Position numbers and translations under genes: made by a program. Under the pieces are notes generated by a model. That model worked only from the letters and a program-made list of their open reading frames with translations. It was not told the DNA's origin and did no database searches. This document shows, piece after piece, positions 12,853 to 29,132 of a stretch of 64,000 nt of DNA. Position 1 is the first letter of the stretch. The number at the start of each line of letters is the position of its first letter. This stretch comes from Auanema rhodensis. Lineage: Eukaryota; Animalia; Nematoda. The stretch spans positions 6,448,001 to 6,512,000 of the forward strand of contig OZ059896.1 of NCBI GenBank assembly GCA_964057225.1. The letters are read 5' to 3'.

Positions 12853-13588
12853 ACTCGAGGGATAGGATCAGCAAAACAAGTTTGATAAAAAATTAAAGCG
12901 AATCTGAAAAGAAAATACATTATAAAAGTAGAAAAAATGATCAATTTCTTCAAATTCAGTAGCCATGATATAACAAATATATATATATATATAGAAAGAG
13001 AGAGTTTAGATTAAAAATAATAATTAGTATATTGATATAATCACAATGAAGAAATTTATAATATCGATTAAAATCTATATGAACTTTGATAATATATTTA
13101 AAATTTTTAAATAATAATTTATAACTATTTAAGAGATTTATATAAGGCTACTTATCTTTAAAAGTTATATATTTATATATCTATATGCTTTAGTACACGT
13201 ATGTGTTTGCCGTATATTGCATAGTTGCTTGTAAATGTAGTACGCAATGTGCATCATCAAAGAGCTCGTGCATTCCATAAATAAGTATTGTCTATGGCTG
13301 CATTTTTATTTTATTAAATATTGCTTGAAATCATCATCATGTTATATCTGTATTGATAACATTTATCGATTCTAAATGAGCCAATATATATGTTATGTGT
13401 GATTTTTACACGACAGATCAATAGAGACTTTGATTTCACATGACTTTTATATAGTCATTCTAGTCCATTCTTCTTGTTTCTATCATTTAAGTAGAACTTT
13501 TTCTCATTTACGTTAAACTTATTATGGCTTATTTAATTTTCTAAAAAATAATAATATTATTTCAGGTGATGGTTAATACGAACTAAAA

Positions 13589-14267
13589 ATGGTGTATATT
13601 GATTCTAGTAAGTGTTTATATAATTTTAATCTTTATTTAATTATTCACTGATATCTATCCTTCTTAAATACTAATTAATATATATTTTGTAGTTCAATTT
13701 ATAATTTTTTAGAAGGAAACGTTCTTGAGAAGAAGGCGTCTATCTTCGCCTGCATTACTTCTTTTTTCGGCGTTTTCATTGCTTTGTAATTTTTTAATTT
13801 AATTACCGAAAATTAATGAGCTTACTATAGCTTCCTGTCTCTGTTTGGGTTGGACCGAAGCAATTCAACGCCTAACTCATATCGAGATCAACTTCGTAAC
13901 GGTGATGGTGGGACTTGGCCTGGAAGCGGGGGCCCTGGAGGACCTGGTCGCCGGGGAGATGGCAAGTTATTATCATTCTGCAATGCTTTTGGTTACTTGA
14001 AATAACAGCGTACTTTCTTAAAATGATTTCAACAGCCCTGCCGCCTAGACCTGCTTAAAGAATGTTTAAATTATCTACTTTTTCTTCTTCCAGGTCTACG
14101 TCGTCCAATAGGACGGCTTCCTAATAGTAGTGGAATGTCTTGTCCCCCAATGGCTGGGGGAGGATGAGGAAGGTTAGCTTTTTTTGTAAATCTTTTCATG
14201 CTATTATTCGTTTTTTTTTTCGAAAACGAGAATTATTTACAATTTAGTAACGTTTTCTTTTAGGTAA
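13589..14267 (+). CDS. SELENOK: Selenoprotein K (SELENOK/SelK), 101 aa, Sec encoded by TGA at 14165-14167
   Basis: Exons 13589-13607, 13713-13785, 13831-13961 (GC donor), 14094-14172 and 14264-14267 total 306 nt. Protein: MVYIDSKGNVLEKKASIFACITSFFGVFIAFFLSLFGLDRSNSTPNSYRDQLRNGDGGTWPGSGGPGGPGRRGDGLRRPIGRLPNSSGMSCPPMAGGG-U-GR*. It matches the SelK pattern: MVYI..G.VL start, one TM segment, Gly/Pro/Arg-rich tail, PPMAGG-U-GR end. A SECIS lies downstream. Confidence 0.93.
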
Positions 14268-14269
14268 AT

Positions 14270-14288
14270 GTCTGGGTCGCGCCCAGAC
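14270..14288 (+). promoter_or_regulatory. Proximal stem-loop immediately after the SelK stop (candidate UGA-recoding element)
   Basis: GTCTGGG-TCGCG-CCCAGAC forms a 7-bp GC-rich stem in otherwise AT-rich UTR, 11 nt after the UGA in the spliced mRNA. Confidence 0.6.
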
Positions 14289-14409
14289 TGCCTTCACTAA
14301 CAGGAACTCATACATATTAATCGCCCTTAATTTCCGTTTTTTCTGTTTAATCTAAATTATTTAATTACTTTTACCCCTGTACTTTTTCTTTTGTATGATT
14401 CCTGTTATG

Positions 14410-14520
14410 TTCTCATGAAGCCTATCAAGGGTAGGCGTGGCTTTGTGATGCGTACTCGCCAAATCCCATAGAGGAAGCGACTCGTTGATGTACATAGCAT
14501 ACCTTCGATAGCCATGGGAG
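14410..14520 (+). promoter_or_regulatory. SECIS element, form II, GUGA variant, with extended helix I
   Basis: GTGAT at 14445-14449 faces TGAT at 14486-14489 (tandem G.A quartet). Helix II is GCGTACTCGC/GCGACTCGT. Unpaired AAA at 14461-14463 follows the GA after a 12-nt spacer. Apical mini-stem TCC/GGA. Helix I pairs 14422-14439 with 14493-14511 and 14410-14417 with 14513-14520. Confidence 0.85.
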
Positions 14521-17500
14521 CTTCAGCTTCGGCTGCCAATCGAAATACCTTAGCGGGTTTTGTTGGTAATGAAAAACAACCTAAGATTCTTGTCCTCGGT
14601 ACGTTATATCTATTATGTCGTGTTTCATTCATTGTATCTTAAACAAATTATTGATATGTTAACGAGAGATGTTCAAGAAAATATCAATATGATTTATAGT
14701 AAAATGCCTTTCTTGCTGATATTGGTTCTATATTTTTTAATTAGTTGAAAATAAATCCATCTTCAATTGGATAAAGTTGTATAGAATTTTCTCGTTGGCT
14801 GGCTTTGAACATTTTCAATAAATTATAGCTACACTTCTTCAAGATAAATCTTTTCTTTGATAACTAATTACAGATTTCTCAGCAGCGAGAGTAGTAATTA
14901 TAAAAATCACGCGATTTTAACGATAATCTCTTTTATTAATTTTGAATATTTAGGTTGCATGGGCTCGGGAAAGACGTTGTTATGTCGTCAATTAATGTAT
15001 GTTTAAGGCTATATGATATAAGGCCTAATATAATTTTTTAAAATTTAAAATAAAATATTTTGAATAGGTGGAGGAAGTTTCCATTTATTATAATTATTAA
15101 AAAAAAGAAAGTAGATGATTTAAAAAAGAAAACAAAAGTTGAATCTTATTTCATAGAAAACTCATCGTTTTCTTTATTGTTACTTCTTAAAATTCCATTG
15201 TGTTTTGCTTTCTAAAGAATAAAATTTTTACTATAACAACTGAAAAAAAGTGGTTTTGAAAAATGGACAAATGTTTTACTTATGTAGTAATTATATGATA
15301 AATGTTTTTTCCGCAAAAAATAAAGTAATCTTTTTGTAATTTAGTAATTATTTTTTTTAGATAAAATAAATACCAATACTTGTCAAAAACTGAGTATTTC
15401 TCATACGGATTCTGATTAGGAAGATCCTTTAAAATTATGTAATAGATCAAAAACAAAATTATCAAAAAACAAAATAAATCTTAACATAACAGGAAATTTA
15501 TGAATTTTTTTTTATTATATGATTTAGCTTACATAAACAAAATATTATATTTATGTATTATGTATAGAGTTAAATAGTATCAAAATATTATTTATTTTTA
15601 TATGTTTTAAATATTAGATTATCAATTTCTTTAATAAATTTTAAAACAAAAAGATATTTAAACAGATCAAATGGCCTTTTTTATAATTTTACACCTCATT
15701 GTATAAATATGTAATTCATCACCTCGATGATTTTTAGTTCGTTTGTCTAATGTTTTGAATTGTATAATCTTTTGATTTTCTAACTATAATAACACTAAAA
15801 CAACATTGAAATTCTTAAGAAACAGAAAACATATAATGCATTTTAATTATTTAATTATTTAGGAGATATTCCCGAACTCAGACACCTGTTATTTCTTATT
15901 ATATACACACAGTGCAACATCACATCTTAGTCATTTATAGAGCTTTGGAAGATGTTTGTAAGCAACTCGAAGTTGATTATTCCAAGCGTAAAGTAAGCAA
16001 ATTACTTTGAAACTTAATTAATCACATCACTTTAGGAAGAATTTGATATAATAAATGATTTCCGACATAAGGAAACATTAAAAGAAAGCGTTGTTGAATC
16101 TCTTTTGAAGATTGCTTCATCAGGGCTTTACGAAGAATGTCAGACAAAGTCTCGTCGGTTGAAACTGCCTTATAACTATTCATAGTGAGTCTCTCGTTTG
16201 GTGTTAATTTTCTGTTTTTCCTCACTTTTCATTGAGTTTTCCAATTGGGTAAGCATATCTATATTTGTATGTTTACAAACTATTTTTTTATTTAGTTTAT
16301 AAACACTGATAAACAATAAAATAAAAACAAAATGAGTTGAAGCAATCATTATCAATTATTTGTTCGAAGTAACTTAAAGATAAAAAGATGATATTTCTGT
16401 TGCCATGGTAAGATAATCATAACATTGTTCAATGCAAAAGATGAAAAAAAAAGATGAAAAGAGTCATATCGTTAAGACAATCTGCCAAAAATTATTTTTT
16501 TTGAGTAAGCGAAGCTTGAAAAAACTGTCAGCACTTTGAATGTGGTTCCAAATCTTGATCTTTGTTTCTTCATGACGCAACAAATGTCAATTAATTTACT
16601 TTGTGCTGTTGTTAATACTAAATTAAAAGAAGATTTCAGTTTATTTTAAAAAGTACTGTATCTTTAAAGAAATCTTTCTTATGAAATCTCAACAAAAGGT
16701 TTATAGCTCAAAGATTTTCGTATTCAAAGAGAAACTTAAATGCCATAATTTGGTTTCAATGTTAGCGCCGTGAATATTTGATACAACTTAATCTATTCAT
16801 ATGAGATTATTTAAGATATCTCAGTATATTTCATGACATTATAATTTCTTCATATTTATGTGCTTTTATATATTTCAATATATCTCTTAATTATGTTTAT
16901 TCAGCTTCATTTCTTCATTGAAACGGATTTTGGATGAGAAATATATTCCAACCGAGAGTGATATTATCAACTCATATGCTCCAACTATAGGAATATCTGA
17001 TTATCCTATTCGTGTTGGTTCCGCACGCTTTCAGTAGGAATAGATTATTATGATCTGAAATCGTTTTTTTTTTTCAGTCTAGTAGAGTTACCAGGGCATC
17101 ATGTTTTTCGAAGACGTTGGCACGATTTTTTTAAATACACTATGGCTGTTTTCTTTTTAGTTGATTTAAGTGAACTTTGTGAACCTGAATTTTACAAGGT
17201 ATTATCTTGATTGGTATAAACTTTACATAATGATTTACAGGGATATTTGAAAGGGAAAACTCTACAAATATTTAAAGATTTACTGCCTAGTCCGTTACTA
17301 CGAAACGCTGGACTAATTGTTCTGTTTAACAAGAAAGATAGATTTCAAGAGTTGTCAATCAATGTTAATTGGTCAAACTTGGCTCAACACGTAAGAATAT
17401 TGTTTTTCTTCCTTTAAATCCTCAACAAACATCATTTTAGGTTCGTTCAAGTAACGAAGCTTTGTCATTCTATCGATCACAATTTGTAACATTACTTCCA

Positions 17501-25600: not shown

Positions 25601-28600
25601 ATATCGCACGGAATATGACCGATACCAATGTAGAAACTTGGCTCTTGCACTCACTCCTCGTGAGCAAATTTCCGAGGTTTCATTCGCATCTTTTTTTCTT
25701 TTTTATTTCTTTTTTTCTAGACTTGCGCTAGATATATTTGTCCTGTAGCTGCTGCCATATTAAACAAGACTTCAGAATGCGATTGTGACCCTACCGGATC
25801 TGTTTCTGGAATATGTAATGTTAAGGGTGGTCAATGTGAATGTAAACCAAATGTTATTGGTAGAAGGTAAGTATCGTTTCTTTTTCAAAGTGTTTATATA
25901 AATCTATAGATGTGATCAATGCGCAGTTGGAACCTACGGTTTTGGTCCACAAGGCTGTGCTGAATGCGCTTGTGACTCTGTTGGATCTTTGAACAATCGT
26001 TGCGATAAACTTAGTGGACAATGTGTTTGCCGTGAGAAGGGAATATATGGAAGACAATGTAATCAATGCCAGCCAGGATTCTGGAGTTTCCCAGATTGCC
26101 GAGTAATTATAATCTAAATACATATATTTTTTAATACGAATCTTAGGTTTGCCAATGTAATGATCATGCCAATATTTGTGATCAAGTTACTGGAGCTTGT
26201 ATCGAATGTCGTGACCTTACTGCTGGGCACTATTGTGACCGCTGCCAAGATGGATACTACGGAGATCCAAGACTTGGCGTTGGACTACCTTGCAAACCTT
26301 GTCCTTGTCCAGGTGGCCCAACTAGTGGATTCCAGCATGCTGATACTTGTTACTTACGTCCTGCAAACAATACCCAAGATGTTGTTTGTAATTGCAAGTA
26401 TGTTTTGTTATGGAGTCCCAACACTAATAATTTGTTTGTAGTGCTGGTTATTCTGGAGAAAGATGTGGAAAATGCGCTACTAACTATTGGGGAAATCCAA
26501 CTGAAGTAGGAGGAACTTGTGAGCGTTGTGATTGTAATGGAAATATTGATATGGTCATCGAAAAAAGTTGTGATGCCGTTACGGGAGAATGCTTGAAATG
26601 CCTTCATAATACTGAAGGAGCTCAATGTGAACATTGTATCGAAGGATTTTTCGGAGATGCTAAAATTCGTAGCTGTCAGCACTGTGTTTGTAACTCCTTG
26701 GGAACTAATTCTTCGATGGGAGCTTGTGATCGCATTACTGGACAGTGTCCATGTTTCCCTAACGTTGTTGGAGGACAGTGTGATCAGTGCGCAGAAAATC
26801 ATTATAATCTTTCAAGTACGCACGTAAGTTTTTCAGATTTGTTCTTCAGTTTTCACTTATATTTGTCTTTTATAGGGATGTTCCGCATGTGACTGCGATC
26901 CTAATGGTGTTATTCCTAAAGGTGATGGTGAAGCAGATCTTCAATGCAATGCTTTCGATGGGCAATGTAAATGCAAACCTGGAAGAGGAGGACGAACATG
27001 CTCAGAATGTGAAGATTATTATTGGGGTGATCCAACAAAGCCTGACGGTTGCAACAGATGTGAATGCAACCCAACTGGTTCGGCTAGCCAGCAATGCCAT
27101 CGAAACAACGGTACCTGTGCTTGTTTACCTGGGTCTGGTGGAGCTCTTTGTGACGAATGTGCCCGTGGGTACACCGGCAGATGGCCTTACTGCCAACCAT
27201 GTGGAGAGTGTTTCCATCAATGGGATGGCATTATTCAAGGACTCAAAGAGCAGGTCACTAATCTTATCGATAGTGCTAATAACATCGAAGATACCGGCGT
27301 TGCTTCCGCATATGATTCTGAGTTTGAGAAGATGGAAGCTACATTGGAAGAAACTAAGAAGAAATTAGCTGACGCTAATATCAGCAAGGAACATATGGAG
27401 CAATTGGAAGAAGAAGTGGGTAGATTGAAAAAGGAAGTTGCTGCTGCGCACAGCCGTTTGGAGGGAATTGAATCCAGAATTTCAAACGCTACCCAAGCTG
27501 TTGACTTCGCTCAGGAAGATCTGAAGAGAATTCAAGAAGATTCTGAAAAGTTGACACAAGCTGCTGACGATCTAAATGAGAAAGCTAACAAAATCAAAGA
27601 AGCAGATGTACAAGGAGCTTATAATATTACAAAAGAATCTTCGACCAAGTCTCTACTAGCTCAACAAAAAACAGATGTAGCTATCAGTAAGCTAGCTGCA
27701 GCAGAAAGTGAAGCCCGTGCTGCTGAAGAGTTGTTAGATAGCAATAAAGATGATTTCGAGAAACAATACTCTGAAAACGAAGCTGCTTTGGTTGATAGTG
27801 AAAAGGCGGTAAGTATTAAGATGTGTTACTATTAATTGAATTTGCTTTTAGCTCCATATGCTCGAAGCTGCCTTGCCTGCCCTTAATGGTGAGGTTTGTG
27901 GTGCTGCTTCTGCTCCTTGTGACTCGTTATGCGGTGGACCTGGATCATGTGGATTCTGTGGTGGAATGACTTGTCCCAAAAAGGATGGTGCAGTGAATAA
28001 AGCAGAACAAGCTAAGAGTTTTGCTTTGGAAGCAGATCATAAGCTCAACCAAAAACAAAAAGAAGCTGAAGACGTTTTGACTTTAGTGCGTGACGTTCAC
28101 CAATGGACTGAAACAGCTAAAAAAGATGCGAACGGAGCTTTAAAAATTGCTAAGGATGCCGCTGACAAAGCGAACGTCACTAGAACTGAGTTAGACGAAA
28201 TCATTGATCAAATGCAAAGCTTCTTGAAATCACCAAGAAGTAGTCCTGAAGAAATCCGAACTCTTTCCGAAGAAGTCCTTGCCATGAAAATTAGCTCTAC
28301 TCCAGAACAAATCGCAGAATTATCTGAAAAAATTCGGGAAGCTTTAGCCAAGATTAATAACATCAAGGATATTCTGGATGAAACTAAAGAGAAAAAGGCT
28401 ATTGCTTCCGATCTTGAATCTCGAGCTCTTGCCGCTAGTGAAAAAGCAGCTGCAATTAAAAATACAACTGACACTGTTAAAGAAGCTCTAGGAATTGCAT
28501 CAGACGCCCAAACTGCTGCATCTGAAGCTATTCTTGCTGCCAATGAAGCTATGAAGGAAGCTAGGGAAGATTTGGAATCTGCCAGAAACGAAACAGTTGC

Positions 28601-29132
28601 CACTGAATTGGCTGCCAAGGCGGCAAATGAATCTCTCTCTGGTTTGGAAGGTGAAATGAAAAAAGTCAAGGTTCAATATCTTCAAATCGCCGATGATGCC
28701 AAGAGTGCTTTTGAATTAGTGGACAAAGCTTTACAAGCTTCTTCAACCGCCGAACAGGGAAATAAGCAGATGACGGTATGAAAATTCGGAAATTTAGTGG
28801 ATTATCATATACTATTTTAGACTGATATCGAAAAAGCTCGCGAATTACTTGAAGAGCGATCTGAAGGAAATGATGGACCCCAGAAAAGAGCTGACGATTT
28901 GAGACAAAGAGCTTCAAAATTGCTTTACAATGCTTTACGTCATAATGAAGATATTAATGGTACCTCTTCAATGAAAAAAAAATGAATTAATCTCTTTTCA
29001 GCTTTAACAAAGGACGCTTCAGATGTTAAACTTGACGATTATCAAAGAGCATTAGATGAATTGACTACTCGGTTGGAGTTGGTTACGAAAGATATTCACA
29101 CTAGAACAGAATTCTACGCACATTGCGACTAA
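22693..29132 (+). CDS. lam-1: Laminin beta chain, more than 20 short introns
   Basis: Signal peptide [17 protein letters not shown]; LN domain ([55 protein letters not shown]); many laminin EGF repeats; LF domain; coiled coil with the [12 protein letters not shown] beta-knob; ends FYAHCD*. Confidence 0.97.

What the first reader, a model, noticed from the sequence alone, without database searches (positions are those of the whole stretch)
13589..14267. Hidden Sec-containing selenoprotein K in a rhabditid-type nematode
Seen: a five-exon gene missed entirely by the ORF track. Its in-frame TGA (14165-14167) is followed by GGA AG|G TAA, giving a C-terminus of CPPMAGGG-U-GR, nearly identical to vertebrate SELENOK (PPPMAGG-U-GR). 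Established: C. elegans has a single selenoprotein, thioredoxin reductase TRXR-1; additional selenoproteins including SelK have been reported in some other nematodes. Inference: this lineage keeps a larger selenoproteome than C. elegans, and standard annotation would truncate the protein at the UGA. Cys91, 8 residues before Sec99, could act as a resolving partner.
Basis: partly seen in the sequence, partly recalled or inferred. Interest (0 to 1): 0.85.

Follow-up and report, generated by a model that had tools for sequence, protein, structure and literature searches.

The report
Nematode selenoprotein K gene with selenocysteine
A small five-exon gene in this roundworm encodes selenoprotein K with a selenocysteine UGA codon and the RNA signal needed to read it. 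The gene is real, but many other nematodes carry the same one, so it is an unannotated member of a known family and not a surprise.

Summary
On the + strand at 13589-14267 there is a five-exon SelK gene. It has an in-frame TGA at 14165-14167, then two more codons (Gly, Arg) and a TAA that only forms once the last intron (14173-14263) is removed.

A GUGA-type, type II SECIS lies at 14422-14511. It is the most conserved segment between the window and its closest sampled relative, Auanema sp. JU1783 (about 90% identity; exons 64-89%, introns 30-61%). Nine nematode sequences fold into the same architecture with compensatory changes.

The same layout (TGA, one or two codons, stop, then a SECIS) occurs in strongylids, Auanema, Aphelenchoides and Brugia. 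A Cys paralogue ends in GGCGR. A spliced RNA contig from a strongylid relative shows the last intron removed.

However, Sec-type SelK in non-Caenorhabditis nematodes was reported in 2005, so this is a new member of a known kind.

The scan had already noted this gene's SECIS on this same window (s1-420608, s1-420707).

The parts
13589..13607 (+). Exon 1: start codon, MVYIDS plus the first base of a Lys codon. The donor gtaagt is at 13608.
   Evidence: The Auanema gene has the same sequence and a phase-1 intron here.
13713..13785 (+). Exon 2: (K)GNVLEKKASIFACITSFFGVFIA, the first part of the single hydrophobic membrane segment.
   Evidence: tblastn to P0008/P0010; phase-2 intron as in Auanema.
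13831..13961 (+). Exon 3: the end of the hydrophobic segment and the Gly/Pro-rich tail (WPGSGGPGGPGRRGD).
   Evidence: A phmmer search with this exon alone found Auanema SelK at E=1.1e-6. Also tblastn.
13962..14093 (+). Intron 3, GC-AG type (donor gcaagt), phase 1.
   Evidence: Only this donor restores the frame and keeps the residues that align with orthologues. Auanema has a phase-1 GT intron one codon away. Not confirmed by RNA.
14094..14172 (+). Exon 4: LRRPIGRLPNSSGMSCPPMAGGG, the TGA, then GGA AG.
   Evidence: This piece matches the last 18 positions of the Pfam SelK_SelG profile (E=0.21 on its own). It is conserved in all relatives.
14165..14167 (+). In-frame TGA, the proposed selenocysteine codon (residue 99), third from the C-terminus.
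   Evidence: TGA sits at the same position in nine other nematode sequences. An Aphelenchoides paralogue has Cys here, ending GGCGR.
14173..14263 (+). Intron 4 (gttagc...ttttag), phase 2. It splits the Arg codon, so the TAA stop follows only after splicing.
   Evidence: An intron lies at the same place in Auanema, O. dentatum, H. contortus, P. tenuis and H. polygyrus. The spliced form is seen in the RNA contig L003 of a strongylid relative.
14264..14267 (+). Start of exon 5: the last base of the Arg codon and the TAA stop (14265-14267).
14270..14288 (+). Hairpin directly after the stop codon (7-bp G+C-rich stem, 5-nt loop).
   Evidence: The fold is -16.8 kcal/mol, z=-3.9, and 0 of 200 shuffles fold as well. 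It is invariant in clade V relatives, with a compensatory change in L004 and a different but pairing stem in Brugia. Mammalian SelK has a comparable proximal stem-loop (PMC6844570).
14422..14511 (+). SECIS element, type II. The core is G-UGA at 14445-14448 and the AAA is at 14461-14463, 11 nt after UGAU. A mini-stem follows, then the 3' UGAU at 14486-14489. The long lower helix pairs 14422-14444 with 14490-14511.
   Evidence: Constrained folds of nine orthologous elements give one architecture. Covariation count: 70% of cells paired against 34-50% when slid, 14 pairs with changes on both sides, and 0 of 500 shuffles reach the score. My covariance model has a single hit in the window, at 14412-14509, 67 bits. 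Identity to Auanema is 90%.

Best explanation
This is the orthologue of selenoprotein K (SELENOK/SelK-SelG family) in a clade V nematode, and it is a true selenoprotein gene. The mRNA is made from five short exons. It encodes a protein of about 101 residues with one N-terminal membrane segment and a disordered Gly/Pro-rich cytosolic tail. UGA codon 99 is read as selenocysteine, directed by a nematode-style SECIS (G instead of A before the UGA/GA quartet, AAA bulge, mini-stem) about 250 nt downstream in the 3' UTR. Translation then adds Gly-Arg and stops at a TAA that follows the junction made by removing the last intron. Shown: the gene structure by homology, the conserved TGA, the Sec/Cys pairing with a paralogue, and the conserved and covarying SECIS. 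Inferred: splicing in this organism (including the GC donor), the presence of the Sec machinery, actual Sec insertion, and an ER-membrane role like that of mammalian SELENOK.
For: Reading and translation of the exons. Exon 3 alone retrieves Auanema SelK. tblastn of nematode SelK proteins onto the window gives E=1e-33 to 1e-26. These relatives carry precomputed Pfam PF10961 hits. Genomic loci of Auanema, O. dentatum, H. contortus, P. tenuis, H. polygyrus, Aphelenchoides and Brugia, and two intron-less contigs, all have TGA at this position followed by one or two codons and a stop. The Cys paralogue ends GGCGR. The spliced RNA contig L003 carries the coding sequence, the TGA, the stop, the hairpin and the SECIS on one molecule. 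Literature: a G before the quartet is typical of nematode SECIS elements and clade V keeps the Sec machinery (PMC4114682). [quoted passage not shown] Mammalian SELENOK has Sec third from the C-terminus (PMC9344019).
Against: Rfam's SECIS families give no hit even at E<=10. Helix II of the window's SECIS is weaker (3+4 bp around an internal loop, -6.4 kcal/mol) than in strongylids. Intron 3 needs a non-canonical GC donor. No tRNA-Sec or Sec-machinery gene lies in this window, and the rest of the genome could not be searched. Pfam on single exon pieces is not significant.
Confidence: 0.85

Rival explanations
1. The TGA is simply the stop codon. The worm makes a 98-residue SelK homologue without Sec, and the downstream hairpin serves another purpose, for example for the adjacent G-alpha gene.
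For: Only two codons follow the TGA, so coding conservation beyond it is weak evidence. Every public annotation ends there. The SECIS ends 2 nt before the G-alpha ATG, so it could in principle belong to that gene's leader.
Against: The element has the full SECIS signature: UGA/GA quartet, AAA at 11 nt, a mini-stem and two helices. It covaries across nine taxa. It is kept in Aphelenchoides and Brugia, where no G-alpha gene follows. A paralogue has Cys-Gly-Arg exactly where this gene has TGA-Gly-Arg. The stop after the two extra codons is conserved.
Confidence: 0.06
2. The gene is real but the mature mRNA differs from the model. Either intron 3 uses the weak GT at 13947, giving a protein five residues shorter, or the last intron is partly retained, adding about 24 residues after Sec-Gly-Arg.
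For: GC donors are rare. The GT at 13947 is also phase 1 and in frame. The intron 4 donor gttagc is not optimal. No reads were available.
Against: The residues between 13947 and 13961 align with orthologues (GPGRRG against GPGRNG or GPGRPGRG). The GC donor has the strong extended consensus (AAGT at +3 to +6). Intron 4 and the G/C-TAA after it are conserved in five clade V genomes and are spliced in L003.
Confidence: 0.07
3. This copy is decaying: the GT-to-GC change in intron 3 has inactivated it.
For: The non-canonical donor, and a SECIS helix II weaker than in strongylids.
Against: All exons are open. All other splice sites are intact. The SECIS is about 90% identical to Auanema's, which has the same helix II sequence. 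There are no frameshifts or extra stops.
Confidence: 0.02

Closest known systems
Vertebrate SELENOK (selenoprotein K)
   Same: A protein of about 95-100 residues with an N-terminal MVYI start, one membrane segment and a Gly/Pro-rich cytosolic tail. Sec is third from the C-terminus and followed by Gly-Arg, the SECIS is type II, and a stem-loop lies right after the stop codon (PMC9344019, PMC6844570; the window's features are).
   Different: The nematode tail has a conserved Cys eight residues before Sec; by my recollection the human protein has none there and dimerises through a diselenide (PMC9344019 for the dimer). The SECIS has G instead of A before the quartet.
Sec-type SelK of other nematodes (Taskov et al. 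2005, as cited in PMC2679728; database entries such as H. polygyrus 'Selenoprotein K' and D. immitis 'Selenoprotein')
   Same: The same gene, with TGA at the same place, a GUGA-type SECIS and a post-stop hairpin. In clade V it also shares the last intron and the downstream G-alpha neighbour.
   Different: The window's copy has a GC donor in intron 3 and a much longer lower SECIS helix, shared only with Auanema. Filarial and L004 forms have one residue after Sec instead of two.
Caenorhabditis SelK homologue (Cys form)
   Same: The same family in the same nematode clade (PMC4114682, PMC2375036).
   Different: It has Cys in place of Sec, and the only Caenorhabditis selenoprotein is TRXR-1 (PMC4114682). 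I did not retrieve this sequence myself.
C. elegans trxr-1 SECIS
   Same: A guanine immediately before the non-Watson-Crick quartet, described as typical of nematodes (PMC4114682).
   Different: The trxr-1 element is described as type I. The SelK element here has an AAA bulge plus a mini-stem, which makes it type II.
SELENOS (Cys174-Sec188 selenenylsulfide)
   Same: An ER membrane protein with a C-terminal Sec and an upstream Cys in a disordered tail (PMC3628699 abstract).
   Different: It is a different family. The Cys-Sec spacing is 14 residues there and 8 here, and no bond has been shown for nematode SelK.

Membership tests
SelK_SelG (Pfam PF10961) | Sequence homology over the whole short protein (N-terminal MVYI/MPYI motif, membrane segment, WPGSGGPGGP tail, CPPM-GGG end) | tested here: met
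   tblastn of P0008, P0010, P0012 and P0013 onto the window gives E=1e-33 to 1e-26 over exons 2-4. Exon 1 encodes MVYIDS. Those relatives have PF10961 hits on record.
SelK_SelG (Pfam PF10961) | The window's own product passes the Pfam gathering score | tested here: inconclusive
Only exon pieces could be scanned. Exon 4 matches profile positions 69-86 of 86 with E=0.21 (12.7 bits; cut-off 23.3), and the other pieces give no hit.
SelK_SelG (Pfam PF10961) | Single transmembrane segment near the N-terminus and a Gly/Pro-rich tail | tested here: met
   Read directly from the translations: a hydrophobic run spanning exons 2-3, then a Gly/Pro-rich exon 3-4 tail. No topology predictor was run.
Eukaryotic selenoprotein gene | In-frame UGA aligned with Cys in homologues | tested here: met
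   The TGA is conserved in nine other nematode sequences. The Aphelenchoides paralogue P0031 ends GGCGR, and Panagrolaimus and Parascaris have Cys forms.
Eukaryotic selenoprotein gene | SECIS in the 3' UTR: UGA/GA quartet, unpaired AA(R) 10-13 nt after the core, and helices I and II | tested here: met
   The spacing is 11 nt in all nine sequences. Covariation exceeds the shuffled and slid controls.
Eukaryotic selenoprotein gene | Recognition by curated SECIS models (Rfam) | tested here: not met
   No SECIS family hit at the gathering score or at E<=10. SECISearch3, the specialist tool, was not available.
Eukaryotic selenoprotein gene | Sec machinery in the same genome (tRNA-Sec, SecS, PSTK, EFSec, SBP2, SPS) | not testable with these tools
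   Only this 64-kb window is readable, and it holds no tRNA. The scan's notes for this genome mention none. Clade V Caenorhabditis retains the machinery (PMC4114682).
Eukaryotic selenoprotein gene | Sec is actually inserted | not testable with these tools
   This needs 75Se labelling, mass spectrometry or ribosome profiling.

The most novel reading that the evidence does not exclude
Nematode SelK may work differently from the vertebrate protein. The conserved Cys eight residues before Sec could form an intramolecular selenenylsulfide, a SelS-like switch, instead of the intermolecular diselenide of human SELENOK. The structurally conserved hairpin right after the stop codon (nematodes of clades III and V, and a comparable stem-loop in mammals) could be an ancient element that tunes UGA recoding or termination for C-terminal Sec codons.
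Probability: 0.2. Interest if true: 0.45.

Novelty: new member of a known kind. Interest (0 to 1): 0.25.

Why it matters
The result corrects an annotation. In this genome the gene is invisible to an ORF track, and in its relatives the public proteins stop at the UGA or run into the 3' UTR. It also shows that the single-selenoprotein state of Caenorhabditis is the exception within clade V. Free-living relatives close to Auanema keep a second selenoprotein with a type II SECIS. Such worms could serve as genetic models for how the short nematode SBP2 handles more than one SECIS type. It does not change the known picture of nematode selenoproteomes.

Tried and rejected
- **Rfam:** scans of the whole window (gathering score) and of 13400-15000 (E<=10) gave no SECIS hit, only three chance matches.
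- **My own SECIS scanner:** an energy-based scan of both strands was too permissive (447 candidates) and its constraints were not enforced properly, so I discarded it.
- **The AUGA at 14415:** I rejected it as the SECIS core because the AA lies only 7 nt after it. The hairpin it sits beside is not conserved in Auanema.
- **Pfam and PDB searches on single exons:** not informative.
- **Read evidence:** Four small runs hold about a third of the sampled words of 13400-15400. That share is roughly what a spliced SelK mRNA would cover, but this is only a hint.
- **Literature:** the Taskov 2005 paper is not held, so its content is cited second-hand. A text search for the human C-terminal peptide found nothing.
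- **Post-stop hairpin with Brugia:** MAFFT misplaced Brugia's 3' arm, so I compared that hairpin by single folds.

Full report
**What is in the sequence.** The + strand between 13589 and 14267 holds five short exons that read as one protein.
- Exon 1 is 13589-13607 and encodes MVYIDS plus one base.
- Exon 2 is 13713-13785.
- Exon 3 is 13831-13961.
- Exon 4 is 14094-14172.
- Exon 5 starts at 14264.

The in-frame TGA is at 14165-14167. It is followed by GGA AG, the intron 14173-14263, then G and TAA (14265-14267).

The GT four bases later gives a frame with three stops. A weak GT at 13947 is in frame but removes residues that align with orthologues.

**Is it more than chance?** A full-library phmmer search with exon 3 alone (43 residues) found two proteins. 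One is a 98-residue protein of Auanema sp. JU1783 (73% identity, E=1.1e-6). The other is a mis-annotated fragment from Oesophagostomum dentatum. The Auanema protein begins MVYIDSKGNV and ends at CPPMGG.

Using that protein and then a profile, I found SelK_SelG proteins (Pfam PF10961 on record) in many nematodes. By tblastn they align to window exons 2-4 with E=1e-33 to 1e-26. Against the Auanema gene, all four introns sit at the same places with the same phases. Intron 3 is shifted by one codon.

The laminin-like exon at 27858-28778 is 65-70% identical to strongylid proteins. The host is therefore a clade V nematode, and its closest sampled relative for this locus is Auanema.

**The TGA and what follows it.** I read the genomic loci of seven relatives:
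- Auanema (L001)
- O. dentatum (L002)
- Haemonchus contortus (L005)
- Parelaphostrongylus tenuis (L007)
- Heligmosomoides polygyrus (L008)
- Aphelenchoides avenae (L006)
- Brugia malayi (L009)

I also read two intron-less contigs: L003, a Logan contig from run SRR12213804, and L004, an ENA contig.

All have TGA at the homologous position, followed by one or two codons and a stop. In the five clade V genomes a phase-2 intron sits exactly where the window's intron 4 does, and the next exon starts with G or C followed by TAA. Aphelenchoides has TGA GGC AGG TAA with no intron.

L003 has all SelK introns removed and reads TGA GGC AGC TAA. It is closest to the P. tenuis locus, where the last intron is about 2.4 kb. 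This shows that the last intron is spliced in a relative.

A second Aphelenchoides protein (P0031) ends GGCGR, with Cys-Gly-Arg where the others have TGA-Gly-Arg. Panagrolaimus and Parascaris also have Cys forms. This Sec/Cys pairing is the classical signature of a selenoprotein. It also indicates that the two codons after the TGA are translated.

**The SECIS.** Rfam finds nothing.
- The 5' core is G-UGA-U at 14445-14449.
- Eleven bases later comes AAA (14461-14463).
- A three-pair mini-stem follows.
- The 3' core UGAU is at 14486-14489.
- A long, imperfect lower helix pairs 14422-14444 with 14490-14511.

Nine orthologous elements, each folded on its own with only the AA kept unpaired, give the same architecture. 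The spacing is 11 nt in every case.

On the MAFFT alignment A2, the structure I named has 70% of cells paired, against 34-50% when the partner is slid by one to three columns. Fourteen pairs have changes on both sides, against 4-9 when slid. The covariation score is 0.34, against at most 0.17, and no shuffle of 500 reaches it. Helix II of O. dentatum shares almost no sequence with the window's, yet it forms ten pairs.

The window and Auanema need a one-base shift in the upper half of helix II, so these counts understate their fit. Between the window and Auanema, the lower helix has one double compensatory change (A-U to C-G).

A covariance model built from A2 has one hit in the 64-kb window, at 14412-14509 (67 bits). 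The window was a training sequence, so this shows uniqueness only and is not independent detection. A 20-base degenerate core pattern matches once in the window, where 0.05 matches are expected by chance.

The SECIS is the best-conserved segment between the window and Auanema:

| Segment | Identity to Auanema |
|---|---|
| SECIS | 90% |
| Coding exons | 64-89% |
| Introns | 30-61% |

A guanine before the quartet is described as typical of nematode SECIS elements (PMC4114682). Mammalian SelK also has a type II SECIS (PMC6844570).

**How it most likely works.** The mRNA encodes a small ER-type membrane protein whose UGA-99 is recoded to selenocysteine by this SECIS. Two more residues are added, and termination occurs at the TAA that follows the last exon junction.

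The function is inferred from mammalian SELENOK. That protein has a single membrane span and a cytosolic Gly/Pro-rich tail with Sec third from the end. It takes part in ER-associated degradation and in DHHC6-dependent palmitoylation (PMC9344019).

The gene structure, the conserved TGA, the Sec/Cys pairing and the SECIS are shown. Splicing in this organism, the presence of its Sec machinery and actual insertion are inferred. I put 0.85 on this reading.

The rivals carry little weight:
- TGA as a plain stop (0.06). The SECIS and the Cys paralogue argue against it.
- A somewhat different splice pattern (0.07).
- A decaying copy (0.02).

**Comparison with what is known.** C. elegans and other Caenorhabditis have one selenoprotein, TRXR-1, and a Cys-type SelK homologue (PMC4114682). 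Lobanov et al. 2007 wrote that SelK is replaced by a Cys homologue in nematodes (PMC2375036). But Taskov et al. 2005 reported further selenoproteins in other nematodes. Bae et al. 2009 cite that paper for "Trx reductase and/or SelK" (PMC2679728), and Otero et al. 2014 repeat that other lineages have more than one selenoprotein. I could not read the 2005 paper itself.

Database entries already call the H. polygyrus, Steinernema, Loa and Litomosoides proteins "Selenoprotein K" and the D. immitis one "Selenoprotein", although the sequences stop before the Sec. Truncation at a C-terminal Sec codon is a documented, general annotation flaw (PMC12822975).

This gene is therefore a new member of a known kind. 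A specialist would not be surprised, and I score interest at 0.25.

The Cys in the MSCPPM motif is present in nearly all the nematode SelK tails I saw. It is shifted by one residue in Aphelenchoides, and Parascaris has Ala there. It also occurs in a rotifer and in an unnamed JGI sequence. That fits a functional role but does not test it.

**Limits and rules followed.**
Two local scans used the whole window as the target, with a pattern and a model derived from elsewhere. I also read that stretch once with get_sequence.
The joined protein, read through the UGA, was never built, searched or folded.

Noticed in passing
window 14270-14288; L001 4489-4507; L004 ~408-426; L009 ~2384-2407: A stable hairpin sits two bases after the SelK stop codon. 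Its sequence is invariant in clade V relatives. L004 and Brugia have different stems that still pair (U-A to C-G, G-C to A-U, G-C to C-G). It matches in position the 'proximal stem-loop' described for mammalian SelK, whose function is unknown (PMC6844570).
   Followed up: partly
window 14511-14516; L003 505-1029: The SECIS lower helix ends 2 nt before the ATG (14514) of the next gene, a G-alpha. This holds in all clade V loci read. The spliced RNA contig L003 runs from the SelK coding sequence through the SECIS and G-alpha exon 1 into the unspliced first G-alpha intron. The SelK 3' UTR therefore overlaps the start of the neighbouring gene.
   Followed up: partly
window 13569-13586; L001 3981-3998: A five-codon upstream ORF ends 2 nt before the SelK start codon, just after a tttcag that could be a trans-splice acceptor (13560-13565). 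Auanema has a five-codon uORF at the same distance (-20) with a different sequence. P. tenuis and L003 have a two-codon one at -22.
   Followed up: partly
window 13962-14093: Intron 3 of SelK needs a GC-AG donor (gcaagt). The orthologous Auanema intron starts with GT.
   Followed up: partly
P0009, P0016, P0017, P0024, P0034, P0039 (strongylid annotations): Several public gene models avoid the TGA by splicing around it. They then translate the conserved post-stop hairpin as '...AKCLGSAQT...', which produces false C-termini. The Auanema annotation also calls an 85-residue gene that starts within the SECIS region and takes in G-alpha exon 1 (L001 4641-5115).
   Followed up: partly
L004 575-578: In the low-coverage ENA contig L004 the 3' SECIS core reads UAAU instead of UGAU, although helix II forms ten perfect pairs. 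This is either a sequencing error or a broken quartet.
   Followed up: no
L006 and P0031 (Aphelenchoides avenae): This clade IV fungal feeder has both a Sec-type SelK with a GUGA SECIS and a Cys-type paralogue. The plant-parasitic Tylenchina studied earlier were reported to have lost Sec altogether (PMC4114682).
   Followed up: partly
L009 2440-2485 (Brugia malayi): The Brugia SelK SECIS candidate has U, not G or A, before the UGA core (UUGAC, then 11 nt, then AAA). I read it by eye only and did not fold it.
   Followed up: no
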